A DNA stretch of 64,000 nt, taken from positions 62,001-126,000 of the forward strand of contig NIVC01001315.1 of assembly GCA_002269645.1 (NCBI GenBank), written 5' to 3'. Under the pieces are notes generated by a model. That model was not told the origin of the DNA and searched no databases. It saw only the letters and a program-made list of their open reading frames with translations. Below, one piece after another: positions 3,314-55,186 of this stretch (position 1 is its first letter; every line of letters starts with the position of its first letter). The position numbers were made by a program, and so were the translations under genes. The stretch is from Macrostomum lignano (lineage: Eukaryota).

Positions 3314-4166
3314 TATTTCAATAATGTATTTAGACTACTTTTAAAATTTTTATATTTGGTTAAATAATTTATAATAATTTTATAGGCCTAATTAACAAAA
3401 ATTAATTATTATTATTATTGACAATGCTAATAAGACTAAAAATTCAATGAAAAAAAATATATATCCAACAAGATTTTGGATATATATATATGACATCATC
3501 ATAAACTATTTATTCTAATTTAACTAAATGCCCATTTAAAATTAATCCCTTTGATAGCTTTGCTTATATTAATGATCATATAAATACAATTTTTACTTAT
3601 ATATTTAAATGAATTAAATTATGAATTTTATTGCTTGTATATAATATGATTATCCTTTGATTTTTTAAATTTCTGCTACACTTCTTAAGTAGCCTACTTT
3701 AAAACAACCTTCTTTTTGTATTTAATCAATTATTTAGTTCTTAAGGCTTAAGTAAATAAATTATTTTTTTTTCTTTTATCTTATATTCATTGAGTAGTAC
3801 TCTATAAACATTTTTATATATTATTTGTTACTTAGCTAAAGAAAACAAAATATATTACATTTTGATTATAAGTCTATCTATTTTATACTGTTTTTAAATA
3901 TAAAATTCCTGTATTTTTGTATTAATAATAATAATAGATTAATACTTATAAATACCTGATTAATATCAATAATTAATAATTTTAGTCAACTTAAGATTAT
4001 TTTAACAATAAAAATAAGTTGTAAACAAAGATTTTTTTGTTTCAACATAATATTTACACTAACACATTTTATTTAATTTCGCCAATAATGTAAGTTGAAT
4101 TAAGATTTTCATTAATGATGCACTACACTATACTCTATAGTCTAGTTGCTCATTTTATTATAAATA

Positions 4167-7100
4167 GGGGTTCCAATGAGCTTCGTACAATGTGTCCCAA
4201 AAATGAAAAAACATACAAATGTGTGTTATGCAAATTGGATCAAAGAGGCACTAAATGATATAAATAAGTAAATCCAAAATATATGTCTGAAAGTATACAA
4301 AATATACTTTCCTATGAGTATTGAAACGATGTGTAATATGCCCTACAATAGAAGTTATAGGCACCAAAAGTTTAAGCAAAAAAACAAAAAAAAAACAGAA
4401 ATTTGTCCTTTATGAAAAATGGGGGTATGAAATACAAATTGAAATTTGAGCTTTTAAAAGAAAGAATATAACAAAATGGCTGTTGACTATACACAGAAAA
4501 TGATCTAAAAGATGAATTTTGGGGAAATCGGGATGAAATTTTTTCTAAATGCCCCTATACAGACAATGTAAAATTTTATTCTTTTTTTTCATTGCGTTAT
4601 TATGGGTGCGTTCGAGTGACTTAAAATGACTTAAACTGCCATTTTAACGTCCTTAGTAAAACAAATGTTAAGCAGACTAAATGTAAAAACAATCTAGGTA
4701 AATGATAGTCAAATTACAATTAAGAATTAATTCAATTTCTAAAACCGGTCTAAGATTAAAAAAACGTCGCCTATACTTCTTCCAACTCAACCTGAACGCC
4801 TAGGCACCGTTTTAACTTCGCTCGCAATTACCACATTTAATCGTAATTGAATATTTTGTATTCTTCACCTTTGTTCTATCATTTGCTTTCACGTCCTTTT
4901 GCTCAGTTCGCTACCTGGAAAAGCTGTTGGATTTCATAAATAGGGGCTTCAAATTACCAAAAGCAAAAAACCGCATCTCCTCAGCACCTTCTGCAAGGAA
5001 GATATAAATTTTCCATCAATACATATAAATTGTCATTGCCAAATGAAAAATCTGCCACAGTCAAAGGAATGATGCAGCTACAAGGATTTTATAGCTTTTT
5101 TGTATACATCATGCGATTCTAAATGACTGGAAGAGAGACACTTTCAAGGAAAGCTTTCCGCAAGGTCAAAAAAAAAATATTTTGTTGTGGTATATTTGTG
5201 TCTACTTATAGTAGACAAATGGAATTTAGCAACTACTAGCAATCTATGCCCCCCATTGGGGAGCCAAAGAAATTGATTTTTTTGATCTACAATTGATCTA
5301 CATGTAGCCTTGATATCTTAAAAAATCTGTCAAACTTCTTACCCTAACCCTAACCCCAACCCTAAATTTAATATTTTGTCCATGAGTTTTTGCATGGTGC
5401 TTCTATGATTTTTTGCATGACACTTCCATTATTTTTTTGCATGACGCTTCCATGATTTTTTCATCTGATGCTTCCATGAGCTAAGTTATAAGCTACCCTA
5501 ACCCTAGCCCTAACCCGAATCTTAACGCTATAACCCTGAACCTAACCCTAAACCTAAACTCTAATACCAACCCTAACACTAACCCTACAGCCTGACATCT
5601 GCATAAGTTTGTGATGCGCTAATAGTATTTTTAGCTTAGTATCTTAGCATTAAGGAGCCAAAAATGCAGTACAAGTTTTGTAATAAACTACATGTAGCAT
5701 CTCTTTGCAATATAGCTCAGTAGTCCCTTGTAAGCCTTGACATGTCAGCAATTCCCCCCACAAGCCTTAACATATCAATCCCCCCCCTTGACATCTCAGC
5801 AATGTCCCCATAAGCCTTGAAATCTAAAAAAATCTGTCAACTTTCTAACCCTAACCCTAGCCTAACCCTAACCCTAACCCTAACCCCAGCCCTAACCTTA
5901 AAGCATTGAAATTTCAGTAATTCTCTCCAAGAGTCATTATAGCACTACAGCATTATAGCAATTCCCTGCAAGCCTCGACATTGTAGGGATTCCCCAAATG
6001 AATCTCTTAACTTCGACATGAAGCTTATTTTATTTTTTATATTACGCTTTTCTATCAGCGATCCCTCCCCTGAGGAGGCATCAAATAATATAATAAAAAG
6101 TTTTCAATAAACTACATGTAGCTTCTGACTTTAGCCTTCACATCTCAGTTATTCCCCCATGAGCCTTGACATCTCAGCTATTTCCCCCGTAAGCCTTGAC
6201 ATGTCAGCGATGGCCCCCATAAACCTTGAAATCTGAAAAATCCCTTGTTAACCTTGAAACCCTCTAAAATCTAACCCTCAACCTACACCTGACCTAAACC
6301 TAACTTTAACCCAACCTAAAGCCTTGAATTCTCAGCAATTCTTCTCCCCTAAGCCTTGACATTTTAGTGATTCCTTCTTTAAGAATCACAGCACTATAAC
6401 GATTTCCACCAAGCTTTGACATTGTAGCAATTCCCAAATGAATCTTTTAACTTTGACATGACTTTTCTTTTATGTATACATAGTGCTACTTTTATTTTTT
6501 ACATGACTTCTTCTATCAGCGCCCCCCATGGCGAGCCAATAAAGAATGTAATAAAAAAATTGAGTAAAGTACATGTACTTTGAAATAGCTTCTGACTTTT
6601 GCTTTGACATCTCAGAAACCCTCCTCCCCCCTAATCTCATTTATTCTCCATGAGCCTTGACATCTCAGTAATTCTCTCCAGCACAGAACTATAGCTTCAT
6701 TTAATTTTCAATGTGAATTCTTCATTTATGTCGTATGGGGGTCAACAATGGAGGCTTCCGTTGGAAAGTCACTGGATTTTTTTGACCCTAGCATAAGATG
6801 ATCCCAACAAGCAACCCCTGGCATTTACCTGGTCAGCGACGCCAACTCTGTTTAATACATTGTTTAGTACATGTACAAGCAAAATACATTTCATTTTCAG
6901 AATCATTATTGAAGAAAAAATATTAACCAATAAAGAACATTTTAGGTGCTTGGACACACTACTTTAACTAGCTGAACAAGACAATATCATAAGCAGATTA
7001 AGAGAGGCTTGAAGAGATAATAAAGTATAAAAAGAAAGCAAAAAAATGACACCAAGCTTTTAGAAACTAGTCTAGGGAAAAAAAGAATGACAGGCAAAAG

Positions 7101-7328
7101 AATGCAAAAATTATATATTTTTTCGCAGAAAAGGTCACAAATTATAATACAAAAGTGCAATAGGAAATTGCGAAAAAAATATATAGTAAATATGGCATAA
7201 CTTTTTTTATTCCTTTGCCAAATCTAAAATGTGAGACCATTTTGGATTTTGGTCACAAAGATCTATCCAACATTCAACAATGTAAAAAACTATAAAAAAT
7301 AAAACTTCAAAAACCTCACTGGAACCCC
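4167..7328. mobile_element. Degenerate non-autonomous DNA transposon with TIRs and TA flanks, carrying internal telomere-like repeats
   Basis: TA|GGGGTTCCAATGAG (4165-4180) is inverted to CTCACTGGAACCCC|TA (7315-7330). Weaker inverted similarity lies further in. No ORF. Confidence 0.55.
5340..6320 (-). repeat. Interstitial degenerate (TTAGGG)n patches interleaved with an AAGCCTTGACATCTCAGCAATTCCC motif
   Basis: CCCTAA runs at about 5342-5365, 5498-5590, 5847-5900 and 6270-6320, e.g. aaccctaaccctagcctaaccctaaccctaaccctaacccc. Confidence 0.75.
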
Positions 7329-8224
7329 TATTAATTAAATATATACTAACCTAAGCAGCAAGCATTTATTATGTTTGCTGCTAGTAGAACTCTAATAGGC
7401 CTACTATAATATAACAAAAAAGTAAAGACAATATAATAAAGATAAAGATATAAACATTGTCATTGGTTGGGATAGAAAAGATAAGCACAATAATTTACTC
7501 AATTTGGAAGGCACAAATGATGCACACCTTTTCTCTATTATAAGTTGATTGATTTTTTCAATGAATTATATACTAATAAATTATCATACTCAAGCACATA
7601 TACTGTACACATGCATACATACATGCAAACATATATATATACACACTATAGTCTATCTATAGACCATAGCATATTGTCTATTGATATAATATACCCTAGG
7701 ATTTTGCAGCCCCTATTCAAAATTTTCTGGATTCACATTTGTGTTGTAAGTGTATGCAATGCCATTGTGTGGCAATGCTATAGGTCAACCTAAAAACTGT
7801 AAACTGTGAGTTATTAGGTAAACCTAATAACTCACTATGATAGTATTAACTATTTTATAGCTTGTAGGCCTAGGCCCTACACACAGACACAGTTAGATAA
7901 AAAGTAAGTCAATAACAGCAAAATACCAAAACATAGAGCTACTTCTGGAATTTTTAGAGAAGAGTAGCATAGATGATATTTAGTTCAGCTGGACAATTTC
8001 TTAGTTCTCAGACCTAGGACTATACTATAGATCTCAACGTTTTAACTCAATATAATAGGCCTAAGTTATTTAAGTTAAATTAACTACTAAAAGTACATTT
8101 TCTAAATTTAAAATAAAAATAACTTTTCTATTTGGTCTATACGACACCATTGCTGCTTTTTATAAAAAACTTTAGAATCTAACCTATAGATTTTAGTTTA
8201 TAACAGTTTTGGCGTAATATTTTA

Positions 8225-8618: not shown

Positions 8619-9040
8619 AATATTTTAAGTGAAACTGTAACTTTGTTTAATTTTATTTAGTTTTAGTAGCCTACTTATAGTAGTTAGCGTTTTCGTTTTC
8701 GTTTTCGTTTTTATTTGGTAGTCGTGACCCTAGACTTACGGTACGTAACGTAGGTACCTTATTATCAGGGTTTTTTTTTGTGCGCAGAGTGTGCGTATGC
8801 ACCCTAAATTTTAAAATTGCACCCTGAAATTAAAAAAGTAGGTGCGGTTTAGGTGCGGTCTTATAACCATTTTTCTTTAAAGGCTTAACCATGCTTAAGC
8901 TATTTTTTATGCACTGCCTTAAAATATGAAACAAAATAACTCTTTAAATCCTATTAAGTCATATAGGCGATATAGCCTATAGCTATAGCCTTATGTAAGA
9001 TATTAAAATATACATTCCCAGTTGTCTGAAATGTGAGCAA

Positions 9041-11527
9041 TGTGAGGGTTTCACGAGAGATATTCAGACAAAGGCTCCCTAAAACACGCCCCACACCGGG
9101 CCCCGAACTGCTACACATTATAACATTTTTTGTCAATGCAGTATTTGATTTGATTGGAAAAGTTAAAATAGTAATGGAATAAATATCTTTATTTATTTTT
9201 TTAAATATTCTAATTTTTTATATTCTCGTTTTCATTATTAAATTATAATATTATTATTTTATTAATATTATTATTAATATCACTTATTGTTCACCGAATT
9301 TTATATTTCAAAGTAAAAAAAACTAAATTTAATAAAAACTTGAAGCTTAACAGAAAACGCATTCTGAAGTGTCTTTAGTTATAGTCCAATTTGTTTTAAT
9401 GTGTAGCGCTGCAGGGCGGTGCGGGGCGTGTTTTAGGGAGACCCATTCAGACAGACATTCAAAATGATTGTCTGTAACTTCAAACAAAATTGACCCGCTT
9501 CAACCATCTTTTTGGCAAATACTTACGCAAGTGTTGGGCGTCGAATAAGCTTTAATTTATTAACTGAAGTAAAAATCCTTCTGACATACATTGATTTAAA
9601 AATTGCTTAGCAACACTAGCTCTGATTAGAAATCGCTTTACTGTTGACTAAAATTGTTTTGATCGTAGCAGCCTAAAAGCAGATACTGGATTTAAAAATG
9701 CTTCAATTTACTCTATACGCATGTCTCAGCTTTAAAATGACACCTCAGGCGTCGCAAAAGACAGCTTTGATGCTGAGATATTCGACACTAAACATGCATT
9801 GCTTTGCGCAATCTCACATTCAGAAATTTCACTGATTTTTTGTCGATATTTGTGCAGTTGCCATGTCCTTGTTTTTCATCAGAATCTTGTCAAATTCTAG
9901 TCATGTCTATACGCATGTCTCAGCTTTAAAATGACACCTCAGGCATTGCAAAAGACAGCTTTGATGCTGAGATATTCGACACTAAACATTGCTTTGCTCA
10001 AACTCACATTCGGAAACTTCACTGATTTTTATTCAATATTTGTTCAGATGCTTGTCTACTTCTCCATTTATTAACCATCGCATGGAGCCTTGCTAACGTA
10101 CAAGTGTATGTAGTTACAGTAAATGGGGTTTTTGTGACTCACTTAAACTTGTTTACGCATTCTGCAGCTATTCGCCGCCTTTCATTAGAGTGATTCATGG
10201 AGTCCAGTTGATAAATTTCCACAAATTGGACTGCTTCTACGTCAGATCTCAACATTTGGAACTGTCCTTGAACTATTTCAGAGTTAAGTGAGCTAATGGC
10301 ATCAAATGGAAGGCTAGTGCTCGTACTTGGAAGCGAAGCAGGTTCACAATTGAAATGGTTGTATTCATGGCCATGGGATCTAAACTGATCTGTTTTACTT
10401 TCACGGTCGATTTGGTCTCAGAAGGAGCAGCAGTTGATGGACTGAGGTGAGAAGAAGATGTGTCACGATTTGAGCTGTTTTTAGAAAATATCTTTATCCA
10501 ATTAAATATTTTCATGCGGCTCCTTAGGTTGTTCCGAATTCCGAGTCTAGAAGTCAAGACAGAAAAAAAGTTAAGAACTGCTACTGTAGTCCGTAAGGAT
10601 TGGAAAGCTTAGCAGTACATTAGAAATCGCCTGTTCAATCTAAAAAGTTTGAAGTACATATAGCTATTGGGTTGCAACAACAGTAGAAAAAATTCTTCCT
10701 TTTTATTTTATTCCCACCGCTTACCTCATTCCGATTTGGATAGCAGAATTGCCACGCAAAAAAGTAAAAACATAACAATAAACTATTTGCTTCATATTAA
10801 TTGCCACTGACTGCTAATAAACGCGACGTCAATTTCTCTCAATAACAGTTGGAACATGTTTCTCGTACACTTGTATATTTATTTGAACCGCAAAGCAGTG
10901 AAAAAGTCATGATTGGTTGCCATATGTACAAATGTACACTCACAGACTCACTGACTCAGGTACAATCTATGCAATATAAAGGCAGGAATCATTAAAAATC
11001 AAATACTTAAGACAGTTTAAGAGAAGTCCAGGTTTAAACTGGACATGACTAGAATTTGACAAGTTTCTGATGAAAAACAAGGACACGGCAGCTGCACAAA
11101 TATCGACAAAAAATCAGTGAAATTTCTGAATGTGAGATTGCGCAAAGCAATGCATGTTTAGTGTCGAATATCTCAGCATCAAAGCTGTCTTTTGCGACGC
11201 CTGAGGTGTCATTTTAAAGCTGAGACATGCGTATAGAGTAAATTGAAGCATTTTTAAATCCAGTATCTGCTTTTAGGCTGCTACGATCAAAACAATTTTA
11301 GTCAACAGTAAAGCGATTTCTAATCAGAGCTAGTGTTGCTAAGCAATTTTTAAATCAATGTATGTCAGAAGGATTTTTACTTCAGTTAATAAATTAAAGC
11401 TTATTCGACGCCCAACACTTGCGTAAGTATTTGCCAAAAAGATGGTTGAAGTGGGTCAATTTTGTTTAAAGTTAAAGACGATCGTTTCGAATGTCTGTCT
11501 GAATATTTCTTGTGAAACCCTCACATT
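9041..11527. repeat. Long inverted repeat (foldback-like), arms 9041-9907 (interrupted) and 11041-11527
   Basis: 9445-9907 is the reverse complement of about 11041-11503 with few mismatches, and 9041-9070 pairs with about 11498-11527. A partial direct duplication of the arm follows at 9907-10040. Confidence 0.9.
9071..9444. mobile_element. MITE with 9-bp TSD nested in the left arm of the long inverted repeat
   Basis: TIR (AA)GGCTCCCTAAAACACGCCCC...GGGGCGTGTTTTAGGGAGACCC; TSD ATTCAGACA at 9062-9070 and 9445-9453. The right arm preserves the empty site. Confidence 0.9.
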
Positions 11528-11634
11528 CTAAACAAGACTCAAGAGAAATTGCACTCTGAGCCTTAAAATCGCACCTTGAAATTTGGCACAAGGTGCGATT
11601 TCGCACCTTATCTCTGGCGAAAAAAAAAACCCAG

Positions 11635-11716
11635 CTTATTATTAAGCGGAGGAAAAGAAACTAACAAGGATTCCCCTAGTAACGGCGAGTGAACGGGGAA
11701 GAGCCCAACACCGAAT
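11635..11716 (+). rRNA. Short 28S (LSU) rRNA 5'-region fragment, non-functional dispersed copy
   Basis: TTAAGCGGAGGAAAAGAAACTAACAAGGATTCCCCTAGTAACGGCGAGTGAACGGGGAAGAGCCCAACACCGAAT matches the conserved LSU segment at and after the ITS4 primer site. No other rDNA is nearby. Confidence 0.9.
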
Positions 11717-12964
11717 ACAATGATTTATTGTATGTCGATAGTCAATACTTACGTTGTATTTTTTTACACCTGAAACTTATTTTTGTCAATGGTTTTACGT
11801 TTGCGGTTTTTGAAAAAGTTTTGTTACGTCCACTTTAAAAATTCGGTATACAGAAGAGTATTCCTAGACACATCCCCCGATTTCCACCTAGTCGCTAGTG
11901 CTAGTAGTGGTAGGCCTAGTAGTATTAGTACTAGACTAGTAGGCCTTGGCAGATAGGCCTGCCTAGAAGAGAGCCAAGACAAGTTTTAACTTAAAGAATT
12001 TAATTTAAGGAACCAAATGCTGTGGCATAAGCATAACACACATTCAAAGCCTACTAGTAGAAGTGCCCAATACTAATGATAACTGGCATTAGGCTAGGCC
12101 TAATTCTAAACAAATATTTTATAAACGAAAGTAGTGGCTCTAGCTAGTAAGACTTTAAAGTTTTTATAATTATATTTTATTTAATTTGATAAATCCTATA
12201 TATTTGTCTAAATAAAAATACACATTATTGTGGTTGTGGAAATTAGTCAAGAGACTATACTCTTCCAATAAATCCTAAATATTAAATGCTAAATCTTAAG
12301 AAAACTACTGGCAATGGGCCAATGGTATTGCCATGCATTTTAAAATTAGGTCTGACCTAAACAAAATAAAAATAAGCTAAAAGAAAGAAATTAAAATTTA
12401 AAATAGAAGAAACTTATTTATTATAAAAAATTTATTAAATTATTTTTATATATGAATCATATAATTCAATATATAATTATTTAGTATAATATAGATAGGC
12501 CTATAATTATATATAGGCCCTATATAACATCTAGCTTATTTAGCCTTATTAACCTATTTTAAATAAATATAATGTTTTATTTAATATTTACTAGGTATTT
12601 ATACTTTATATACTATATTATAATCAGCCTATACAAAGATAGAAAGTTTACCTAGGTCTACCACTTTACCAGGTTTAGTTTGGCTAATAATTAGACATTT
12701 AGCTTGCATATAAAAGTATATATTTTCTAGAAAATTCATTATTTAAGTTATAATTCTAGCTCTAGGCCTATAATTATTTTCTTAATAATATTCACTTGTT
12801 ATTTTTTACAATAAAGATATTTGAAGTTGACAAACATTTATTAGTCCTAAAAGCTAGCTTATGTCATAAGATATTAGAATCTTGGTTATGCCATTAGCAT
12901 TTCTGCAATATCTATAATCTGTAAGCTGTCTTTGTAACCCCCCTCCCCTTTATAAGACTTAACA

Positions 12965-14370
12965 ATGACATTAGTAATTCCCCTATGAGCCATAGCAATG
13001 GCATCTTAGCAATTCCCCTGTATGCCATCCATAGTTATTCCCTTATAAGCCATGGCAATTGTTCTTATCAGTTCCCTATGAACCATGGCAATGGCAGCTT
13101 AGCAATTCCCTTATAAGCCATAGCAATTGTTGTTAGCAGTTCCCTATGAGCCATGGCAAAGGCATCTTAGCAATTCCCTCATGAGCCATAGCAATTGTTG
13201 TTAGCAGTTCCCCTATGAGCCATGGCAATGACATCTTAGCAATTCCCTCATGAGCTATGGTGATTCCCCTATAAGCCATGGCAATAGCTCTCAGCCATTT
13301 CCCTGCAAGCCATGACAATTTCCCCATGAGCCATAGCGATTCCCCTATGAGCCATGGCGATTCCCCTGTGAGCCAAGGCAATGGCAACTCAGAAACCTCT
13401 ATGAGCCATGGCAATTCCTCTATAAGCCATGGTGATTCCCTCATAAGCCATGGCAATGGTATCTTAGCAATTCCCTTGTGAGCCTTGACAATTCCCCTGT
13501 GAGCCATGGCAATTCCCCTGTGAGCCATGGCAATTCCCCTGTGAACCTTGACAATTACCCTGTGAGCCATGGCAATTCCCCTGTGAGCCATGGCAATTCC
13601 CCTGTGAGCCATGGCAATTCCCCTGTGAACCTTGACAATTACCCTGTGAGCCATGGCAATTCCCCTGTGAGCCTGGCAATTCCCCTGTGAGCCGTAGCAA
13701 TTCCCCTGTGAGCCTTGACAATTTCCCTGTGAGCCATGGCAATTCCCCTGTGAGCCTTGACAATTTCCCTGTGAGCCATGGCAATTCCCTGTGAGCCATG
13801 GCAATTCCCTGTGAGCCATGGCAATTCCCCTGTGAGCCTTGACAATTTCCCTGTGAGCCATGGCAATTCCCCTGTGAGCCATGGAAATGGCATCTCAGCA
13901 ATTCCCCTATGAGCCATGGCAATGGCTCTCAGCAATTCCCCTGTGAGCCATGGCAATTCCCCTGTGAGCCATGGAAATGGCATCTCAGCAATTCCCCTAT
14001 GAGCCATGGCAATGGCATCTCAGCAATTCCCTGTGAGCCATGGCAATTCCCCTTTGAGCCATGGAAATGGCATCTCAGCAATCCCCTGTGAGCCATGGCA
14101 GTTCCTCTGTGAGCCATGGCAATGGCATCTCAGCATTCAGCAATTCCCCTGTGAGCCATGGCGATTCCCCTGTGAGCCTTGACAATTTCCCTGTGAGCCA
14201 TGGCAATTCCCCTGTGAGCCTTGACAATTTCCCTGTGAGCCATGGCAATTTCCCTGTGAGCCATGGCAATTCCCCTGTGAGCCATGGCAATGACTCTTTA
14301 CAATTCCCCCATGAACCATGGCGATTCTTGTGTGAGCCATGGCAATGGCATCTCAGCAATTCCCCTGCAA
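12965..14370. repeat. About 21-22-bp minisatellite (CCCTGTGAGCCATGGCAATTC) with a leftward decay gradient
   Basis: Regular units at 13480-14370; increasingly TA-rich variants at 12965-13300. Confidence 0.95.
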
Positions 14371-15609
14371 TCCATTAAGGAGTTTCAGCACCTCACTAAA
14401 ATGGCGATGGACTAAGGCCACACAAGCCTCAAACACCCTTCAACTGGATTGTTAGATTGCTATTTTTTAGGCTTTCTTTGTGTAAGTTTTGTGAATCGAA
14501 TTGTTTAAGGTTTTCTAACACTATTTAAATGCCTGTTTTGCGACCACTGCTTTACTGATTTGATTGCAGGTGGTTATAAGATTCATAAGCTTAGTAGTAA
14601 TCAAAATCCTGTGTGCCAGGCCCTCTTTGTTTCTCCGTGTGCTTCCTTCACTTTACAGTTTGGCCTAGGGGGTGGATTATCAATATCAATGAGCTGCTGG
14701 CGATGACTAATCCACAGATTTTATCCCTAGCCTTGAGCAGCTATCTTAAAGTTAGCATTGCAGAGACCCGGGTTGTCCTGCTGAAGGGCCGACAGTCAAC
14801 TCGAGTTCACAATGGATGTGGGGTGGCTGCCCTTGCGAATTGAGGCTTCATAATCCTTCATTTAGTTTTGCTTCCCTGCCTCTCAGCCCTTCTGTCTCAC
14901 AAATCCCTTTAACTCCCTGGCCTCCTGCTTCTTTGTTATTGGAATTTATGGCAGTGAGGGGGCCTGTGCGTGACCCGCAGCACGGCCTGGGGTCTGCGCC
15001 GGTCCGCATTGGTCGGCTGGGGATGGGGTGGGTGCGGCATCGGGGACAGGGCCGTCTGAGTCATGCCGACCTCCCCGCGGCCCCGCCATCCATCTCCCCT
15101 TAAATGCACGCGTGGCCGCCTTTCTCTCTTCTGTCGCTCTTGCCTTCTCCTCCTCGCACGGAGCTTCCATCAGAGGAAAATATTATTTAACAAGAACCCG
15201 TTTCTAGTCCCATCATTTTGCAGACAAAGACCTCAGTAGTTCTAGTCTTTGTTCAAGCGCCTTTTACACTAGACCTAGAAGATAATAGAACTAAGCATGG
15301 AGCACATGCACGTAGCACCGAACGGTATGCTTTACTTTGGCTACCGGAAACAATATTGGCTGGCGCCTTCGGTTGCTGCTAATCTCATGTAAGTCTGTAC
15401 TGCTGCATCTGATTTTCACGTCTGCAACCTGCAAGCATCTCCTTTTATTAGGCCTAGTCTGCTTTCATTTTTCCCCAGAAAATTCACTCCCAGCATTTGC
15501 CGGCCGCCTGATAGCCACACCGAAGCTCTCCTAATGTCCCAATCAACATAATGTTTACTCCGAGATTCCCAATGTCATTCCTAGCTTCCAATCGTAAGTC
15601 CCTCCAAAT

Positions 15610-15910
15610 CAACATTTAATGCCCCAGGCTCCGTAATGTCACCACAAGCTCCATAATGTCACTCTAAGCTCCACAATGTCACCCCAAGCTGCATACTGTC
15701 ACCCAAGCTCCGTAATGTCACCCCAAGCTCCATACTGTCACTCCAAGCTTCACAATGTCACCCAAGCTCCATAATGTCATTCCAAGCTTCACAATGTCAC
15801 CCCAAGCTCTATAATGTCACCCCAAGCTGCATACTGACTGTCACCCCAAGCTGCATACTGTCACCCCAAGCTCCGTAATGTCACCCCAAGCTCCACAATG
15901 TCACTCCCAG
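15610..15910. repeat. About 20-bp minisatellite (GTCACCCCAAGCTCCATAAT)
   Basis: About 14 imperfect units are visible. Confidence 0.85.
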
Positions 15911-17186
15911 TTTCTCACTGTTATTGAGTGCTCTCAGACTCCAGTTCACATGCTTTTGTCTAGGTAGTAGTTTTACAAGCTCAGTTATCTGCATTCTTTA
16001 CTGCCAGCACTGCAGAGGGCTTAAAAAGGCGCCGTTAAAATATTTTATAACTTGATGCTCTTAGTTTCTACTCAAAAGAAGCCCGTCTGCCTATTTTTGG
16101 CATCTCTGAGAAAGACGCAACTGGCCACTGAGTTTTACTGCACTCGCAAGTTTTTCTTAACTTTTACAGCCCCACCCCTGGTTTTTGTCACGACGGCCGT
16201 TTATGGCTCTCGATTGTTAATAAGCTTGCGATTCCGGTTGGCTGGCCCCGTGTCCCCCGGCCTTTCCTTAATTTGGTGCAGCACAGCCGGTTAAATAGGC
16301 CTGCGGTGTAGCAGCGCTCTGGGTGCAGCAGTTTCATTAGGGTGCCGAGCTGTCATAATTTGGTGCAGCGGCTGCGAGTTCTATCCACTGCAGTCTATTC
16401 GCTGCAACGTGCCTGTCTCGCCTGGGATAACCGGGGCTGCCCAATTTCCCCTATGAAACATTACACTGCGCCATGGGGCTGGGCAGGCACGGCTGTCCGC
16501 GGGCTCGCTTCACGTTTCATTAAATTGTTTATTGTCTTGAAACTGGAACCAAGACGCGACAGAGCAGCAGGCTTGTCTGGGCTTTTGCCAACCATTTTCT
16601 CCCACGTAGGTGACTAGGAAAGAATTCGATGACATTGTGCGCTCTAATAGTTTGTCCAGGTGGGCAGGGCGGCCCCGGGGCGACAAGTCTTTGTTCCAGT
16701 GGGAGACCCTGGATCTGAGTGGATCTGGGGATTGACAGCCAGTCTAAAGGGAGGTTTTTTTGCCTTGATAAGAGGCCGGGGGGGAATTGCGTGGGCAGCC
16801 GTCTTTCAAATTGGAAAGCCTTTGTTCCTTTCTGAGCCTGTAAGCCCCCGAGGGCCACCTGGACCAAAAGATCAGAGAATTAATGCATCCCCAGATAATG
16901 CGCGATCATTCTTATCGATCTCATTCGCACCTTCCGAATTTGCTAGGATAGGAAAAAGCAGTTCTGCCCCCCTCTGTGTTGCGCAACCACCGGAATCGTG
17001 CGATGCCAGGTGGAAAGCGCTAACAGCTGAGTCCCAACGTGCGAACTGAGCCATTGTCCTTAGCTTGGGGTGGCTGTTTTGTTATTTATAATTTCAAATG
17101 GACGGCCCTGCCGCCCAACTACCGATTCGGGTGGCCTTAGTAACAGAAAATTTATTGTTGCGATAAACAAGTTGATTTTATTTCTT

Positions 17187-19769
17187 ATGTCCAACTACAC
17201 GAACCAATTTGCACCAATGGCATGCTTGACTGCTTGGGTGCCAACTTCAGTGCCAATATCCAATGCCGCTTCCAGGTCAGGCCGTCCAAGGCAGCGTCAA
17301 AGCGGCACTGGTGGCAGAAGCAGCACGGGAAACAGCAGCAGCGGAAGCACCGGAAGCAATCCCCGGCTAGTAGCCGTGCAGCCGTTCTCGCAGCGTCAAT
17401 ACCATCAGTACCACAGGCGGCCGCACCAGCAGCAGGCCATGAGACAGCAGGTCCTGCCATTCAATAACAACAATGTGCTCTCGCCTAGCGGCGCTGCCTC
17501 CGATGCAGCTAGCGCTGACGGCGGCACGGGAGCGGCTAACGAGCGCCCAGTCCGCCTGGAGCTGCTGCTGGACCTGCCGCCCTGCCCGCTGGAGGTGGCC
17601 AGCCAGCACGCCTGGAATCCTGCCGACCGGTCTTTGAATGTGCTGGTGAAGGCGGACGACTGTTTGACCCTGCACAGGTTCGTGGCGCTAGGAGTTCTGC
17701 CGCTAATGACTCACGTGTCTATCTATGACCCTCATCTTTGTATCAGTGACCCGGATCTTTATCTCTATGACCTTATCACTGTCTCTATGACCTTATCACT
17801 GTCTCTATGACCTCATCTTTGTCTCTATGACCCCATCTTCGTCTCTATGACCCTCATCTGACAATGTCTTCAACTTTGTCTCTGACGTCGTATCCATAAC
17901 CACATCACTGCCTATGACCCACGCCAGTATGTGTTATGACCCTCGCCTTTGTCAACACGTCTATCAATGACCAAACTTTGTATATCTACGAGTTCCAGTC
18001 TCTGGCAAACACCACAGTCTTTCTCGTTTGATTAACCCCCAACGCCCTCAGTATTGTCTAGGCCAGCAGTTTCCAATTACAGATCAGTTTGTTATTTCAA
18101 CCCCCCCCTCCCCGCCCCCACCGTCCAGACAGCCGGTGGCGCAGAGCACAGACTGCATCCGGTCGCTGTGCAGCTACAGCCGCGGCCTGCACGCCTGGGA
18201 GATTTGCTGGCCCGTCAAGCAGCGCGGCACCCACGCGGTGGTGGGCGTGGCCACCGCCAAGTGCCCGCTGCACTGCGTCGGCTATCACAGCCTGCTGGGC
18301 AGCAACGCCGAGTCCTGGGGCTGGGACCTCGGTCGGGGCCGCCTGCAGCACGACAGCGGCCGTCTGCCTACCCAGCAGTACCCGGTGGTGCCGCATGGTG
18401 CCGAGGCCGAGCCTCTGCAGGTAGGCGGCCAACTGGAGTCACTCGGATCCCCATTTCCCAAGATCCCCAATATCCTAATCCTCATCATCCCTATCCCCAA
18501 TATCCTAATCCTCATCATCCCTATCCCCAATATCACAATCCTCATTAATCCTATCCCCAATATCCTAATCCTCATTATTCCTATCCCCAATATCCTAATC
18601 CTCATCATCCCTATCCCCAATATCATAATCCTCATTATTCCTATCCCCAATATCCTAATCCTCATTATTCCTATCCCCAATATCCTAATCCTCATTATTC
18701 AGATCCCCATCCCCAATATCCTAATCCTCATTGTTCATATCCTCAATATCCTAACCCTCATTATCCCTATCCCAATATCCTAATCCTCATTGTTCATATC
18801 CTCAATATCCTAATCCTCATTATTCAGATTCCCAATATCCTAATCCTCATTGTTCATATCCTATCAATATCCTAATCCTCATTATCCAGAACCCCATTCG
18901 CAATATTCCAGCAGGTCAAATTAGGCCATCTATCCTAGTATTAACCATATCCGCAAAATCTCACATTCCACAGCACTTAGTGATGCATTGATAACTCCGC
19001 TATCACCTATCAGGTTCCAGACACCTTCATCATGGTGCTGGACATGGACGAGGGTTCGCTCAGCTTTGTTGTCGACGGCCAATTTCTCGGCGTGGCCTTC
19101 CGCGGACTCAAGGGCAAGCAGCTGTTCCCCTGCGTCAGCGCCGTCTGGGGCCACTGCGAGATTCGCCTGCGCTACCTCAACGGGCTCGAGCGTGAGTCAT
19201 GAGCTGCTCTCTTGCCTGCTCAGGGCCTGGCATTCCACATTGGTGTGCTTACCTTTGTTGGGCTCTCGCTCCGCTTAATCACCTCTCTGTTCCACCTGCC
19301 ATACAACCCATACTGCAACCCACTCTGCAAACCACACTGCAAACCACTCTGCAACCCACACTGCAACCCACTCTGCAAACCACTCCGCAAACCACTGCAA
19401 CCCACACTGCAACCCACACTGCAACCCACACTGCAAACCAATCTGCAACCCACACTGCAAACCACTCTGCAACCCACACTGCAACCCACACTGCAACCCA
19501 CACTGCAAACCAATCTGCAACCCACACTGCAACCCACACTGCAAACCAATCTGCAACCCACACTGCAAACCACACTACCCTGCCGCACCTTGACAGCCGA
19601 GCCGCTGCCGCTGATGCTGCTGTGCCGGTCCGTCATCCGCAAGCAGCTGCAGGCGGCTGTCCAAGCCGGCAAGCCTGGCCTGGCCGGCGCCGACTCGCTG
19701 CCGCTGCCGCTCACCGTCAAGGACTTCCTGCTCTACAGGGACCGGCGTGCGGCCCGGCCTGACTGGTAG
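17187..19769 (+). CDS. SPSB: SPRY domain-containing SOCS box protein (SPSB/gustavus family); exons about 17187-17677, 18129-18420, 19014-19191, 19597-19769; start codon uncertain
   Basis: [16 protein letters not shown]|[46 protein letters not shown]; [34 protein letters not shown]; SOCS box [32 protein letters not shown] introns with phases 2, 0, 1 join in frame. Confidence 0.95.
18465..18890. repeat. 30-bp intronic minisatellite (ATCCCTATCCCCAATATCCTAATCCTCATC), SPSB intron 2
   Basis: Direct tandem units. Confidence 0.9.
19300..19575. repeat. 12-bp intronic minisatellite (CACTGCAACCCA), SPSB intron 3
   Basis: Direct tandem units. Confidence 0.9.
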
Positions 19770-20784
19770 GCGGAGTTTGGCGACCCGTCTTTCTGGCTAG
19801 CGGGCCGGCAACTGTAACGCAAATTTCAGAGCTGTCTCAGCCCTGCGAGCTTTCCGCCTTTCTCTGGTTGTCCCCCCCATCTCCCATGAGTGTCCTCCGG
19901 CGTCTCCCGCTGCACCAGCGAATCTCCCCGCCCACCAGCCAATGATTCCCGCGGCACAGACTGTTGCTGCTGGCCCCGCCTACAAGCCCCGCCGATTGCA
20001 TCGGACTGAGCTCACCGGTATCGATTAGTTCACTCATTCCCACCGATGCCCGCTGTGCTGTTCTCTTTTTAATTTGTTTTTTAACGGGCAGCCGGGCGTC
20101 TTCCGGTTCCAGATCGCCTGCTGCTGCTCTCCGTTTTTATTTCTTATTCATTTCGTTTTCCACTGTCAGTTCGTGTTTTTATATAACTTTTTTAAACTAA
20201 CTGAGAGAAGACCTGACTGTAAAGTGCTGTACATTGCTGTACACAGTGCATGTACAGGTGTAGTATTAAATCCGCCACTTCCCTGGCCGCCTATTTAATC
20301 AACAATTGTCTCCATGCGAGCCTTTCATAGCTGATTTATTATTATAAATTAATGGAATTTCATTTTGCTTCGGAATGCAGGCAGGCGCTGGCGGTGACTC
20401 GCAACTTCTAGTCTCAGCACTGCCATTATTTAACTTATAGAGTGCTTGCGAATGTGTACTACTGCCACTCAGTAGCCAGTAGTATTGTGCGTGCAGTCAT
20501 CATTCTTTAGTGTTGTTCAACTTGTTGCTGCGTTCCGCGCTCTTTCTCAGCTGGAATTCCGCGGCAATGCTGGCGGCAATAATAAATTGCTATCCACTTC
20601 TCAACTGTTTAACTGGAGCTCCATTCCAGGAAACAGGCCCTGATTCCTCGCCAAAATTCACTCAAGGAACCGATCATTGTGACTTTGATATTGCGAACCA
20701 GAAATTGTGCGGTGGGACTTCACTTGACGAGTTTGTTATTTATTGCTCTATTGGGCTCGCGAATTCCGCAGATAGGGCGCTATC

Positions 20785-22135
20785 ACAAACCCTAAATATC
20801 ACATTCTCTAAGGGGGGGCATCACAAACCCTAAATATCACATTCTCTAAGGGGGGGGGCATCACAAACCCTAAATATCACATTCTCTAAGGGGGGCATCA
20901 CAAACCCTAAATATCACATTCTCTAAGGGGGGGGGCATCATAAACCCTAAATATCACATTCTCTAAGGGGGGGCATCACAAACCCTAAATATCACATTCT
21001 CTAAGGGGGGGGGGCATCACAAACCCTAAATATCACATTCTCTAAGGGGGGGCATCACAAACCCTAAATATCACATTCTCTAAGGGGGGGGGCATCACAA
21101 ACCCTAAATATCACATTCTCTAAGGGGGGCATCACAAACCCTAAGTATCACATTCTCTAAAAGGGGGGGCATCACAAACCCTAAATATCACATTCTCTAA
21201 GGGGGGCATCATAAACCCTAAATATCACATTCTCTAAGGGGGGGCATCACAAACCCTAAATATCACATTCTCTAAGGGGGGGGGGCATCATAAACCCCAA
21301 ATATCACAAACCCTAAATATCACATTCTCTAAGGGGGGCATCACAAACCCTAAATATCACATTCTCTAAGGGGGGGCATCACAAACCCTAAATATCACAT
21401 TCTCTAAGGGGGGGGCATCATAAACCCTAAATATCACATTCTCTAAGGGGGGCATCACAAACCCTAAATATCACATTCTCTAAGGGGGGGGGCATCACAA
21501 ACCCTAAATATCACATTCTCTAAGGGGGGGGCATCACAAACCCTAAATATCACATTCTCTAAGGGGGGGGGGCATCACAAACCCTAAATATCACATTCTC
21601 TAAGGGGGGGGGCATCACAAACCCTAAATATCACATTCTCTAAGGGGGGGGGCATCACAAACCCTAAATATCACATTCTCTAAGGGGGGGCATCACAAAC
21701 CCTAAATATCACATTCTCTAAGGGGGGGCATCACAAACCCTAAATATCACATTCTCTAAGGGGGGGGGGCATCACAAACCCTAAATATCACATTCTCTAA
21801 GGGGGGGGGGCATCACAAACCCTAAATATCACATTCTCTAAAAGCAACCTACATCATAAACCCCAAATATCATAACTCCTAAATATCACATTCTCTAAAA
21901 GCAACCTACATCATAAACCCAAAATATCATAACTCCTAAATATCACATTCTCTAAAAGCAACCTACATCATAAACCCCAAATATCATAACTCCTAAATAT
22001 CACATTCTCTAAAAGCAACCTACATCATAAACCCCAAATATCATAACTCCTAAATATCACATTCTCTAAATTCTTACAAGACCCATCGCAAGCCCTAAAT
22101 ATCATAACCCCTGAATATCACATTCTCTAAGGGAA
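20785..22135. repeat. About 37-42-bp minisatellite (Gn-CATCACAAACCCTAAATATCACATTCTCTAA) switching to a 57-bp variant at 21840
   Basis: Tandem units with a variable-length G run; the second unit type is AAAGCAACCTACATCATAAACCCCAAATATCATAACTCCTAAATATCACATTCTCTA. Confidence 0.95.
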
Positions 22136-22984
22136 ACTCTCTAAACCCGAAATATCACAAACCCGAAATATCATAACTTCAAAAGTTCTAGCATTGTCCA
22201 ACACTTTGCATTTTCGGAATTGTGATTTTTCGGGTTTTTGATGCCCCCCCCCGCAGATGCATCCTCTACTGTCTGCTAGAGACTTGAACAATATTACAGT
22301 GCGTGTACATCTGGTGTCAAGCTAAATACCAAGGACGACTCCAGTAGATTTCTTAGAAACGATTTTGGGCCCTGGTTTTCCGCGAAATGCACTACGGAGA
22401 TGGAAGGCTCGGTACAAATACCAACAGTTATTTATTCACCGAACCGAACCGCGCTGTCACCAGGCCTAATCAGATTCACAATCACACAGTCACACAGACT
22501 AAACTTCACAAATTTTGCAGGACCTTCACTTCACGTGACCTAAACTACATATTGGATCTAAACTTCACGTGACCTAATTTCAGAAATTTCAGGCTGTTTA
22601 TAGAGGTTTGCTTAGTTGATACATGTACATGTGCCTTGAACAAAAAAAATACGTTTTATTTCGCAAAAATCAATGTCCATAAATTTTCTAAGAATCAAAA
22701 TTTAACATCCTACTTAAGTAGTCCTTGCTGAATTCAATTGTCAAAGAAATATATTTGTAGAAGTATTGATTTTTTTCTACTTTCAAGTTGTGGAGAATTT
22801 TATCAATACTTGAGTGGGTACTCGATTAAGCTAATCTTACATGAACTGTGCATAGGTTTTTAAAACTTCAAAAAAAGTGCAGGTACAAGGAACCAGTCGG
22901 CGAAAAAGTACAGGTTTTCTGTGCTGTGCCATGTTCATTAGATGTACACTCAAAGGCCTGATTGAGAGCTCCCAAGCTGGTGGG

Positions 22985-24100
22985 CGCCATGCAGCTACAG
23001 AGGGGGCGCCATATGCAGCTACAGAGGGGGCGCCATATGCAGCTACAGAGGGGGCGCCATGCAGCTACATGAACAGAGGGGGCGCCATGCAGCTACATGA
23101 ACAGAGAGGGTGCCATATGCAGTTACAGAGGGGGCGCCATATGCAGTTACAGAGGGGGCGCCATATGCAGCTACAGAGGGGGCGCCATGCAGCTACATGA
23201 ACAGAGGGTGCGCCATGCAGCTACATGAACAGAGAGGGTGCCATATGCAGTTACAGAGGGGGCGCCATATGCAGTTACAGAGGGGGCGCCATATGCAGTT
23301 ACAGAGGGGGCGCCATATGCAGCTACAGAGGGGGCGCCATGCAGCTACATGAACAGAGGGGGCGCCATGCAGCTACATGAACAGAGAGGGCGCCATATGC
23401 AGCTACAGAGGGGGCGCCATGCAGCTACATGAACAGAGGGGGCGCCATGCAGCTACATGAACAGAGAGGGTGCCATATGCAGTTACAGAGGGGGCGCCAT
23501 GCAGCTACATGAACAGAGGGGGCGCCATGCAGCTACATGAACAGAGAGGGTGCCATATGCAGTTACAGAGGGGGCGCCATATGCAGCTACAGAAGGGGCG
23601 CCATGCAACTACATGAACAGAGGGGGCGCCATGCAGCTACATGAACAGAGAGGGTGCCATATGCAGTTACAGAGGGGGCGCCATATGCAGCTACAGAAGG
23701 GGCGCCATGCAGCTACATGAACAGATAGGGTGCCATATGCAGTTACAGAGGGGGCGCCATATGCAGCTACAGAAGGGGCGCCATGCAGCTACATGAACAG
23801 AGGGGGCGCCATGCAGCTACATGAACAGAGAGGGTGCCATATGCAGTTACAGAGGGGGCGCCATATGCAGCTACAGAAGGGGCGCCATGCAGCTACATGA
23901 ACAGATAGGGTGCCATATGCAGTTACAGAGGGGGCGCCATATGCAGCTACAGAAGGGGCGCCATGCAGCTACATGAACAGAGAGGGTGCCATATGCAGTT
24001 ACAGAGGGGGCGCCATATGCAACTACAGAAGGGGCGCCATGCAGCTACATGAACAGAGGGGGCGCCATGTAGCTACAGAACCGCGCCAGTTACAAGAGGC
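22985..24100. repeat. Minisatellite of about 24-bp subunits (GAGGGGGCGCCATATGCAGCTACA and variants) with higher-order alternation
   Basis: Alternating GGCGCCAT(AT)GCAGCTACA and CATGAACAGAGAGGG subunits. Confidence 0.9.
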
Positions 24101-24297
24101 GCCAGCAACATGTACAAAGTGACTGCAATACCTACTGCAATAGCTACTACACTGCTAATTTAGAAGTTGGCTGCAACGAGCTGCAAGTGTCAGTGAGTGC
24201 AACAGTATGCTTGCCAATAATTTGATAGGCGGCAAAATGCGTGGCCGAAAAACTGTCGCTCCCGTACTCCGGCCAGCGCGGACGCCAGAGCTGGCAG

Positions 24298-40361: not shown

Positions 40362-45916
<5,555 letters not shown>

Positions 45917-52876: not shown

Positions 52877-55186
<2,310 letters not shown>

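What the first reader, a model, noticed from the sequence alone, without database searches (positions are those of the whole stretch)
12965..14370. Mutation gradient recorded inside one satellite at the domain boundary
Seen: right-hand units read CCCTGTGAGCCATGGCAAT and CATCTCAGCAAT. Toward the AT-rich block they become CCTTATAAGCCATAGCAAT and CATCTTAGCAAT (TG>TA, CA>TA repeatedly at 12,970-13,300). Because every unit shares an ancestor, the array is an internal ruler for the spread of the mutagenic mark. The continuous array across the boundary also argues against a chimeric assembly.
Basis: seen in the sequence. Interest (0 to 1): 0.75.

Follow-up and report, generated by a model that had tools for sequence, protein, structure and literature searches.

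The report
Old decayed end of a flatworm minisatellite
A tandem repeat in the flatworm Macrostomum lignano has an old, unrefreshed end that has drifted towards A+T by ordinary neutral C-to-T decay, next to a recently re-amplified clean part; it does not record a mutagenic mark spreading from the neighbouring AT-rich DNA.

Summary
The quoted sequences are real. The array (12963-14375) is built of a 21-bp unit A and a 14-bp unit B. In its left 500 bp, 40 of 124 CpA/TpG sites read TpA, against 5 of 219 on the right.

- **Step, not gradient.** The change falls at 13472, where the recently amplified higher-order repeats begin, and there is no trend inside the left part.
- **Copied changes.** Many of the changes are copies within a 68-bp higher-order repeat. 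A minimal count gives 14 CpA>TpA events out of 47 substitutions (P = 0.03 against 25 other arrays).
- **An animal genome.** The window is Macrostomum lignano contig NIVC01001315.1, so fungal RIP is not expected.

A second copy of the locus (NIVC01000944.1) has the same order: AT block, array, SPSB gene. Its left end is also decayed. Its right part was re-amplified independently, as 35-bp dimers rather than 21-bp monomers. So the units differ in age and the array is not a ruler.

The AT block diverges 6-7% between the two copies, about the same as fourfold-degenerate sites of SPSB (5.7%). It evolves neutrally and is not hypermutated.

Verdict: ordinary array-edge decay with a CpA-biased neutral spectrum. 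The junction is genuine and not chimeric.

Open lead: the AT blocks have CpG o/e of 0.08, which could reflect past methylation.

The parts
12088..12945 (.). AT-rich, CpG-depleted block that abuts the array (GC 0.13-0.27). It is shared with the homeologous copy and has no satellite homology.
   Evidence: Composition. No satellite signal with C>T-tolerant scoring. Aligns to L001 4930-5425 at 92% identity. CpG o/e of the shared AT blocks is 0.08.
12941..12978 (+). Left edge: a heavily altered A'-like unit (CCCCTTTATAAGACTTAACAAT) and the first B unit (GACATTAGTAAT). Both are also present in the homeolog, so they were altered before the copies split.
   Evidence: Sequence; pairwise alignment with L001 (columns 60-100).
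12963..13471 (+). Old part of the array that has not been homogenised. It holds 17 A and 11 B units, mostly alternating, and includes the 68-bp higher-order repeat at 13037-13255. It carries the TG>TA and CA>TA variants (G7A, G9A, G16A in A; C8T in B).
   Evidence: Mean pairwise identity of A units is 0.79, and all 17 are distinct.
13472..14291 (+). Recently amplified, homogenised part. It contains 21/42/63-bp repeats of A and A' (CCTTGAC variant) and a 90-bp repeat at 13847-14100.
   Evidence: TRF rows (13467-13888, period 21, 89% matches; 13847-14100, period 90, 96%). Change-point at 13472. A-unit identity 0.89.
14292..14375 (+). Right edge: four to five diverged units (GACTCTTTACAAT, TCCCCCATGAACCATGGCGAT, TCTTGTGTGAGCC...). 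The same variant units lie inside the homeolog's array, so they are old too.
   Evidence: the same units at L001 6077-6131 and 6593-6647.
14376..14700 (.). Unique right flank. Divergence from the homeolog falls from 4.7% to 2.7% to 0.7% to 0% in successive 150-bp windows towards the SPSB gene.
17277..19766 (+). Coding exons of the SPRY/SOCS-box gene (SPSB/gustavus homologue, BOX15_Mlig021347g1). I used them to fetch the homeologous locus and as a neutral yardstick.

Best explanation
The locus is a minisatellite in the flatworm Macrostomum lignano. It lies between an old AT-rich intergenic block and the SPSB gene.

The array has an age structure. Unequal exchange or replication slippage keeps re-amplifying the central and right part, which wipes out accumulated mutations there. 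The left 500 bp, and a few units at the right edge, have not been refreshed since before the genome duplication. These old units have accumulated neutral substitutions.

In this genome's neutral DNA the commonest substitution is C>T at CpA, with ACA the most affected context. Old units therefore read TATG, TAAG, ATAG and CTTAG, and their GC content falls from 0.53 to 0.44.

Amplification of a 68-bp higher-order repeat inside the old part then multiplied some of these changes, which makes them look recurrent.

The neighbouring AT block is the end state of the same neutral decay in much older sequence, including transposon fossils. It is not the source of a spreading mutagen.

*Shown:* the age structure, the independent re-amplification, the neutral rate of the AT block and the context bias. 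*Inferred:* the mechanism of re-amplification, and the view that the AT block reached its composition by the same decay.
For: 1. **Step at the repeat boundary.** The change falls at 13472, which coincides with the start of the TRF-defined homogeneous repeats.
2. **All classes are raised on the left.** Other substitutions are 5.7% on the left and 2.3% on the right. Minimal events are 47 in 511 bp against 23 in 903 bp.
3. **Homeolog L001.** It has the same consensus units, a decayed left part (CpA>TpA 26/165 against 6/227 on the right) and a differently organised homogeneous right part. The extreme-left mutated units and the right-edge variant units are shared.
4. **Neutral yardstick.** Fourfold sites of SPSB differ at 11/194 = 5.7% (CI 2.9-9.9%), and the AT blocks at 5-7%.
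5. **The load fits neutral decay.** In the AT blocks, CA<->TA differences are 0.22 per CpA site and 0.093 per site in CpC and CpT contexts pooled, a ratio of 2.4. Pooling the old parts of both arrays gives 0.228 against 0.105, a ratio of 2.2. With 9% minimal events per site, the left part is about three times older than the per-lineage divergence since the split (about 3%). That predicts roughly 16-33% of CpA sites converted; 32% is observed.
6. **Same context order everywhere.** The order of 5' neighbours (ACA, then TCA and CCA, then GCA) is seen in the array, in the AT blocks and, more weakly, in the GC-rich flanks.
7. **A second array behaves the same way.** In the array at 20782-22173, decayed units with ACA>ATA are shared by both copies, and the homogeneous part is specific to one lineage.
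Against: - Counted per unit, the CpA>TpA excess in the window's left part (3.7 times other C>T) exceeds that in the homeolog (1.3 times, not significant).
- In the tentative unit-by-unit alignment, window-only CpA>TpA changes outnumber L001-only ones 22 to 7, while the other classes are equal. Amplification of the 68-bp repeat can explain this, but I did not prove that it does.
- Young arrays and the GC-rich flanks show almost no CpA preference (ratio about 1.1). A compartment-specific spectrum is therefore not excluded.
- Substitutions in the AT blocks could not be polarised, because no outgroup was available.
- The old right-edge units show no CpA excess, though the numbers are tiny.
Confidence: 0.7

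Rival explanations
1. Domain-specific mutagenesis. The AT-rich block is a silenced, cytosine-methylated domain (CG plus CA methylation by DNMT1/DNMT3, or another deaminating process). The first 500 bp of the array lie inside that domain, so CpA and CpG cytosines there deaminate faster. This would be an animal analogue of RIP leakage.
For: - CpA>TpA is the only class strongly enriched on the left when counted per unit.
- The shared AT blocks have CpG o/e of 0.08 in both copies, against 0.6-1.0 in the GC-rich flanks.
- CA<->TA differences per CpA site are 2.4 times those at other cytosines in the AT blocks, but 1.1 times in the GC flanks.
- M. lignano retains DNMT1 and DNMT3 and has low-level 5mC (PMC11292947, PMC9246332).
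- The unique flank right of the array shows divergence falling over about 300 bp.
Against: - The AT block does not evolve faster than fourfold-degenerate sites.
- The profile is a step at a repeat-structure boundary, with no trend inside the left part.
- The homeolog's left part shows no significant CpA preference.
- The compartment difference in spectrum disappears when normalised per C+T site. The enrichment of CA<->TA over the CpC and CpT contexts is then 1.87 in the AT blocks and 1.36 in the GC flanks, from the counts.
- Remaining CpGs in the AT blocks do not differ more often than CpAs (5/29 vs 84/380).
- No methylation data are at hand.
Confidence: 0.15
2. Pure subfamily structure. The left part is an amplified lineage of units that already carried A at position 7 of unit A and T at position 8 of unit B, as ancestral polymorphisms. 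Essentially no mutation has accumulated in place.
For: - G7A units also occur in the right part (13903, 13993) and throughout the homeolog's array, and C8T units occur in the homeolog's left part.
- Together these two sites account for 22 of the 40 CpA>TpA changes counted per unit.
- The 68-bp repeat shows local amplification.
Against: - All 9 CpA sites are hit at least once on the left.
- After removing G7A and C8T, 18 of 96 CpA sites are still converted, against 13 of 149 other C sites.
- All 17 left A units are distinct, with 79% mean identity, so the left part is diverged rather than freshly amplified.
Confidence: 0.1
3. Fungal-type RIP, or an assembly chimera joining RIP-affected foreign DNA to flatworm DNA.
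For: AT-rich blocks next to DNA of about 50% GC, with TG>TA and CA>TA changes, look like RIP at first sight.
Against: - Genes on both sides are M. lignano: the SPSB protein is 98% and the EF-hand protein 97% identical to M. lignano proteins.
- Window positions 7277-29769 are 100% identical to NIVC01001315.1.
- A second contig has the same arrangement.
- RIP indices of the shared AT blocks are 1.11, 1.19 and -0.08, which fails the substrate and composite criteria.
Confidence: 0.02

Closest known systems
Age-structured tandem arrays: diverged edge units flanking a recently homogenised core, as in layered centromeric satellites, and one-sided (polar) turnover of minisatellites (from my own knowledge; polarity at one minisatellite is discussed in PMC2599865)
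   Same: Edges are more diverged than the core. The core is organised in near-identical higher-order repeats. Turnover is fast enough that two copies of the locus have different cores but share their edge units.
   Different: The decayed zone is strongly asymmetric: 500 bp on the left against about 85 bp on the right. Its substitutions are dominated by one dinucleotide context (CpA>TpA).
RIP and RIP leakage in ascomycete fungi (PMC3105345, PMC9453070, PMC7882544)
   Same: C>T and G>A transitions with a CpA preference, next to an AT-rich block, acting on repeated DNA.
   Different: The host is an animal. RIP indices fail. The AT block evolves at the neutral rate. The profile is a step rather than a leak. 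The repeats most alike (the right part) are the least mutated, which is the opposite of what RIP does.
Methylation-driven CpG decay in mosaically methylated animal genomes
   Same: The old AT blocks are almost free of CpG (o/e 0.08), while the GC-rich gene flanks keep theirs. The species has DNMT1 and DNMT3 (PMC9246332).
   Different: The satellite consensus has no CpG, so this process cannot explain the TG>TA changes unless CpA is methylated as well. No methylome of a free-living flatworm was available (PMC9246332 says the patterns are unknown).

Membership tests
Fungal RIP / RIP leakage | Occurs in fungi, which have the RID/DIM-2 machinery | tested here: not met
   The window is Macrostomum lignano contig NIVC01001315.1. 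I did not look for RID-like genes.
Fungal RIP / RIP leakage | C>T transitions on both strands with a CpA preference | tested here: met
   Left part: 40/124 CpA sites against 13/149 other C sites (P = 1e-6 counted per unit). Both G>A (G7, G9, G16) and C>T (C8 of B, C13, C18) occur on the + strand. At the level of minimal events the evidence is weaker (14/47, P = 0.035).
Fungal RIP / RIP leakage | RIP indices: high TpA/ApT, (CpA+TpG)/(ApC+GpT) below about 1.03 (or 0.75), composite index above 0 | tested here: not met
   Shared AT blocks: 1.11, 1.19, -0.08. The block next to the array is borderline: 1.19, 1.00, 0.19. Array left part: 0.56, 4.29, -3.72.
Fungal RIP / RIP leakage | The affected region mutates faster than neutral DNA, and leakage declines with distance | tested here: not met
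   AT blocks diverge 5-7% and fourfold sites 5.7%. The step model beats the gradient, and there is no trend within the left part.
Age-structured tandem array (edge decay plus core homogenisation) | Edge units are more diverged than core units in every substitution class | tested here: inconclusive
   Met for non-C>T substitutions (5.7% vs 2.3%) and for CpA>TpA (32% vs 2.3%). Other C>T changes are equal per unit (8.7% vs 8.2%), because two repeat-borne variants inflate the right-hand count. Minimal events per bp are 3.6 times higher on the left.
Age-structured tandem array (edge decay plus core homogenisation) | The core consists of near-identical higher-order repeats | tested here: met
   TRF: 13467-13888 at 89% matches, 13847-14100 at 96%. 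A-unit identity is 0.89 on the right and 0.79 on the left.
Age-structured tandem array (edge decay plus core homogenisation) | An independent copy of the locus keeps the edge units but has a different core | tested here: met
   The L001 array at 5415-7020 shares the left-edge and right-edge variant units. Its core is 34/35-bp A+B dimers, against 21-bp A monomers in the window.
Methylation-driven cytosine decay | Strong CpG depletion confined to the affected compartment | tested here: met
   CpG o/e is 0.08-0.09 in the shared AT blocks of both copies and 0.6-1.0 in the GC-rich flanks.
Methylation-driven cytosine decay | 5-methylcytosine is actually present on the region in the germline, in CG and CA contexts | not testable with these tools
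   No methylome was available. The literature says only that DNMT1 and DNMT3 are present and that 5mC is low (PMC11292947, PMC9246332).

The most novel reading that the evidence does not exclude
The AT-rich, nearly CpG-free blocks of the M. lignano genome are (or were) germline-methylated silent domains, in which CG and CA cytosines deaminate. The proximal 500 bp of this minisatellite lie inside such a domain. This would be an animal counterpart of RIP-like decay, with the array edge marking the boundary of the domain.
Probability: 0.12. Interest if true: 0.6.

Novelty: new member of a known kind. Interest (0 to 1): 0.22.

Why it matters
As it stands, this is an ordinary and clear example of how tandem arrays age. 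One part is continually refreshed, while the edges fossilise and drift to the genome's neutral composition.

It is useful mainly as a caution. Unit-to-consensus differences in a satellite cannot be read as a spatial record of mutagenesis unless the units are shown to be of equal age.

Two by-products may interest people working on M. lignano.
- The duplicated copies of this locus give a local neutral yardstick of about 6%. Against it, the AT-rich intergenic DNA is neutral and the GC-rich non-coding flanks look constrained (about 2%).
- The AT blocks are almost devoid of CpG. This hints at compartment-specific cytosine methylation in a flatworm whose methylation pattern has not been mapped.

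Tried and rejected
- **Fungal RIP as the starting hypothesis.** Dropped once a BEL/Pao peptidase and M. lignano proteins identified the host, and the RIP indices failed.
- **The AT block as a fully decayed continuation of the satellite.** I aligned it with scoring that tolerates C>T and G>A. Scores for 11613-12962 (16-42) lie within the range of other AT blocks (mean 31, maximum 53). Rejected.
- **Other genomic copies of the satellite through its translated ORF.** No protein hits.
- **Other copies within the window.** Only distant 30-bp relatives at 5700-6700. They lie in a lineage-specific insertion and are not usable as an outgroup.
- **Dispersed repeats to compare AT and GC copies.** None useful; only a pair of terminal inverted repeats.
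- **Rfam and tRNA scans.** Nothing found.
- **Exact look-ups.** The EF-hand ORF and P0001 are not on record. The look-up of the window's 166-aa ORF returned only the window's own contig.
- **Unit-by-unit orthology between the two arrays.** It implies 21% divergence, three times neutral, so most units are not orthologous. I treat the lineage-specific counts as unreliable.
- **Faster mutation in the AT compartment.** Rejected after the fourfold-site yardstick.
- **Wasik et al. 2015 (PMC4603488).** Not held in the library.

Full report
**What is there.** Positions 12963-14375 hold a minisatellite made of two units: A (TCCCCTGTGAGCCATGGCAAT, 21 bp) and B (GGCATCTCAGCAAT, 14 bp). B equals the tail of A plus an insert.

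The clean forms occur only at or after 13495, and the TA forms only at or before 13232, or 13471 for related variants. GC content rises from 0.42-0.47 in the left 500 bp to 0.52-0.56 on the right. TpA counts per 100 bp are 8, 8, 7, 2, 6 on the left and then 0-2.

**Substitution classes against the consensus**.

| Class | Left, 12963-13471 | Right |
|---|---|---|
| CpA/TpG>TpA | 40/124 sites | 5/219 |
| Other C>T | 13/149 | 23/281 |
| All other substitutions | 29/511 | 21/903 |

By 5' neighbour, the converted fractions are: ACA 14/19; TCA 6/19 and 8/11; CCA 5/19, 1/19 and 1/11; GCA 3/19, 1/11 and 1/11.

As a control I analysed 25 other minisatellites in the same window. CpA>TpA makes up 9% of their variant cells and 12% of their distinct variants. 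There is no CpA preference per site: 0.21 against 0.19. None of them shows a comparable one-sided concentration.

**Why the raw counts overstate the case.**
- The left part contains a 68-bp higher-order repeat (13037-13255, 3.2 copies, 92% identity), which copies G7A, C8T, G9A and G16A.
- A minimum-spanning-tree count over distinct unit haplotypes gives, on the left, 14 CpA>TpA, 9 other C>T, 11 T>C and 13 transversions. On the right it gives 3, 9, 5 and 6.
- Against the 18% share expected from the control arrays, adjusted for composition, 14/47 gives P = 0.035. Left versus right is not significant (P = 0.15).
- The profile is a step, not a gradient. The change-point at 13472 has AIC 209.6, against 224.6 for a logistic slope. 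There is no trend within the left part (rho = -0.09, P = 0.66). The step coincides with the start of the homogeneous 21/63-bp repeats called by TRF (13467).
- The array starts at the composition boundary and does not cross it. The AT block to the left has no satellite signal even with scoring that tolerates C>T changes.

**Whose genome.**
- A BEL/Pao peptidase fragment points to an animal.
- An EF-hand ORF is 97% identical to a Macrostomum lignano protein.
- The gene 3 kb right of the array is an SPRY/SOCS-box (SPSB/gustavus) homologue, 98% identical to BOX15_Mlig001905g1.
- Fetching the contigs that encode the two NCBI members of that cluster showed that window 7277-29769 is 100% identical to NIVC01001315.1 (L002). 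NIVC01000944.1 (L001) is a second, colinear copy matching window 653-31006.
- M. lignano is a recent polyploid with a redundant assembly, and about 15% of its genome is simple and tandem repeats (PMC5730564, PMC10733133). A window full of minisatellites is therefore normal for this species.
- RIP is described as fungus-specific (PMC6963459, PMC7882544).

**What the second copy shows.** L001 has the same order: AT block, array (5415-7020), SPSB gene. The junction is therefore real.

Its array has the same consensus units. This supports the polarity G7 and C8 ancestral, TA forms derived.

Its left part (5453-6130) is also heterogeneous and decayed: CpA>TpA 26/165 against 6/227 on the right, other C>T 24/204 against 10/244. 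There, however, the CpA preference is not significant (P = 0.29).

Its right part is a run of near-identical 34/35-bp A+B dimers, whereas the window's right part is mostly A monomers (unit orders). The cores were therefore re-amplified independently after the copies split.

The extreme-left units (GACATTAGTAAT, GGCATCTTAGCAAT) and the odd right-edge units (GACTCTT.., TCCCCCATGAACCATGGCGAT, TCTT.TGTGAGCC) are shared, so they are older than the split. The premise that every unit records the same time span is false.

**Is the AT block a mutagenised domain?** Between the two copies, the AT-rich left domain differs at 5-7% of aligned sites. The GC-rich non-coding flanks on the right differ at about 2%. 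Local GC and divergence correlate at Spearman -0.65 (P = 1.5e-12).

That looked like faster mutation. However, fourfold-degenerate sites of the SPSB exons differ at 11/194 = 5.7% (CI 2.9-9.9%), which is significantly above 2.2% (P = 0.004). The AT block therefore evolves at the neutral rate, and it is the GC-rich flanks that are slow, presumably because they are constrained.

In the AT blocks, C<->T differences are most frequent before A: 0.22 per CpA site, against 0.093 per site in CpC and CpT contexts pooled, with ACA highest at 0.34. The same order of 5' neighbours is seen, more weakly, in the GC flanks.

Pooling the old parts of both arrays gives 0.228 against 0.105, nearly the same ratio. 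With about 9% minimal events per site, the left part is roughly three times older than the per-lineage divergence since the split. That predicts the observed conversion of about a third of CpA sites. No extra process is needed.

**A second example.** The array at 20782-22173 repeats the pattern. Its decayed 57-bp units, with ACA>ATA twice, are shared with L001. The homogeneous 38-41-bp units are expanded only in the window.

**What remains open.**
- Counted per unit, the window's left part has more CpA>TpA than its homeolog. In a tentative unit alignment the window-only CpA>TpA changes outnumber L001-only ones 22 to 7. That alignment implies 21% divergence, so most of the units are not orthologous, and repeat copying inflates the count.
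- Young arrays and the GC flanks show almost no CpA preference. Whether this reflects selection, the lack of polarisation, or a true compartment difference cannot be settled without an outgroup. Normalised per C+T site, the difference is not significant.
- The shared AT blocks have CpG o/e of 0.08-0.09 in both copies, while the GC-rich parts keep their CpGs. M. lignano has DNMT1 and DNMT3 and low 5mC, and its methylation pattern is unmapped (PMC11292947, PMC9246332).

**Comparison with known systems.**
- The locus behaves like an age-structured tandem array, with fossil edges and a refreshed core. It meets the tested criteria for that kind, apart from the non-CpA C>T class, which does not differ between the two parts.
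- It resembles RIP leakage (PMC9453070, PMC3105345) only in the CpA>TpA bias. It fails on host, RIP indices, rate and spatial profile. In addition, the most similar repeats are the least mutated, which is the reverse of RIP.

**Verdict.** This is an ordinary phenomenon in a previously undescribed array, of low interest, with one modest open lead in the CpG-free AT blocks.

Noticed in passing
window 4075-7344 (detail at 5300-6700): A stretch absent from the homeologous copy L001. It is a composite repeat with a macro-unit of about 430 bp. Each macro-unit combines 30-bp units (AGCCTTGACATCTCAGCAATTCCCCC, relatives of the focal satellite) with telomere-like (CCCTAA)n runs. It may be a telomere-associated element or a captured subtelomeric repeat.
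   Followed up: partly
window 8746-11718; inverted repeats at 9445-9907 and 11042-11504: A second stretch missing from L001. It contains an element with 463-bp terminal inverted repeats at 98% identity and normal CpG content. It looks like a young DNA transposon inserted into the old AT block.
   Followed up: no
window about 2500-3200: A fossil mariner-type transposase (Pfam PF01359, E = 1e-12), riddled with stops and frameshifts. It sits inside the AT-rich domain and is shared with L001.
   Followed up: partly
window 653-817, 1049-2193, 3177-4075, 7344-8224, 12088-12945, and the matching parts of L001: The old AT-rich blocks have only 5 CpG in about 3.9 kb (o/e 0.08-0.09) in both copies, and GpC is over-represented (rho 1.6-2.2). 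The GC-rich flanks keep CpG at 0.6-1.0. This may be a trace of compartment-specific cytosine methylation.
   Followed up: partly
window 14376-31006 against L001 7020-22694: GC-rich non-coding flanks and introns differ by only about 2% between the two copies, while fourfold sites of SPSB differ by 5.7%. Much of this non-coding DNA seems constrained. Several 150-bp windows show 0-0.7% divergence.
   Followed up: partly
window 20782-22260; L001 14150-15064: A palindromic satellite. The window has expanded the forward arm (38-41-bp units) and keeps a tiny reverse arm at about 22220-22250. L001 has expanded the reverse arm instead. The decayed 57-bp units are shared by both copies.
   Followed up: partly
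window 15622-61358: About 40 separate minisatellite arrays (periods 12-57 bp) in 64 kb, several of them inside introns of the SPSB gene (18463-18885, 19304-19576). There are also very long, pure microsatellites: (AGAT)234 at 53947-54882 and (ACTA)89 at 44400-44754.
   Followed up: no
window 47358-47849 (+); 42712-43407 and 44843-45565 (-); 26865-27365 (+); about 34263 onward (+): Other coding features: a BEL/Pao retrotransposon peptidase fragment; two exon-like ORFs with CAP/SCP domain matches; a 166-aa EF-hand-like gene; and a scramblase gene that starts right of the second AT block and has arrays within its span.
   Followed up: no
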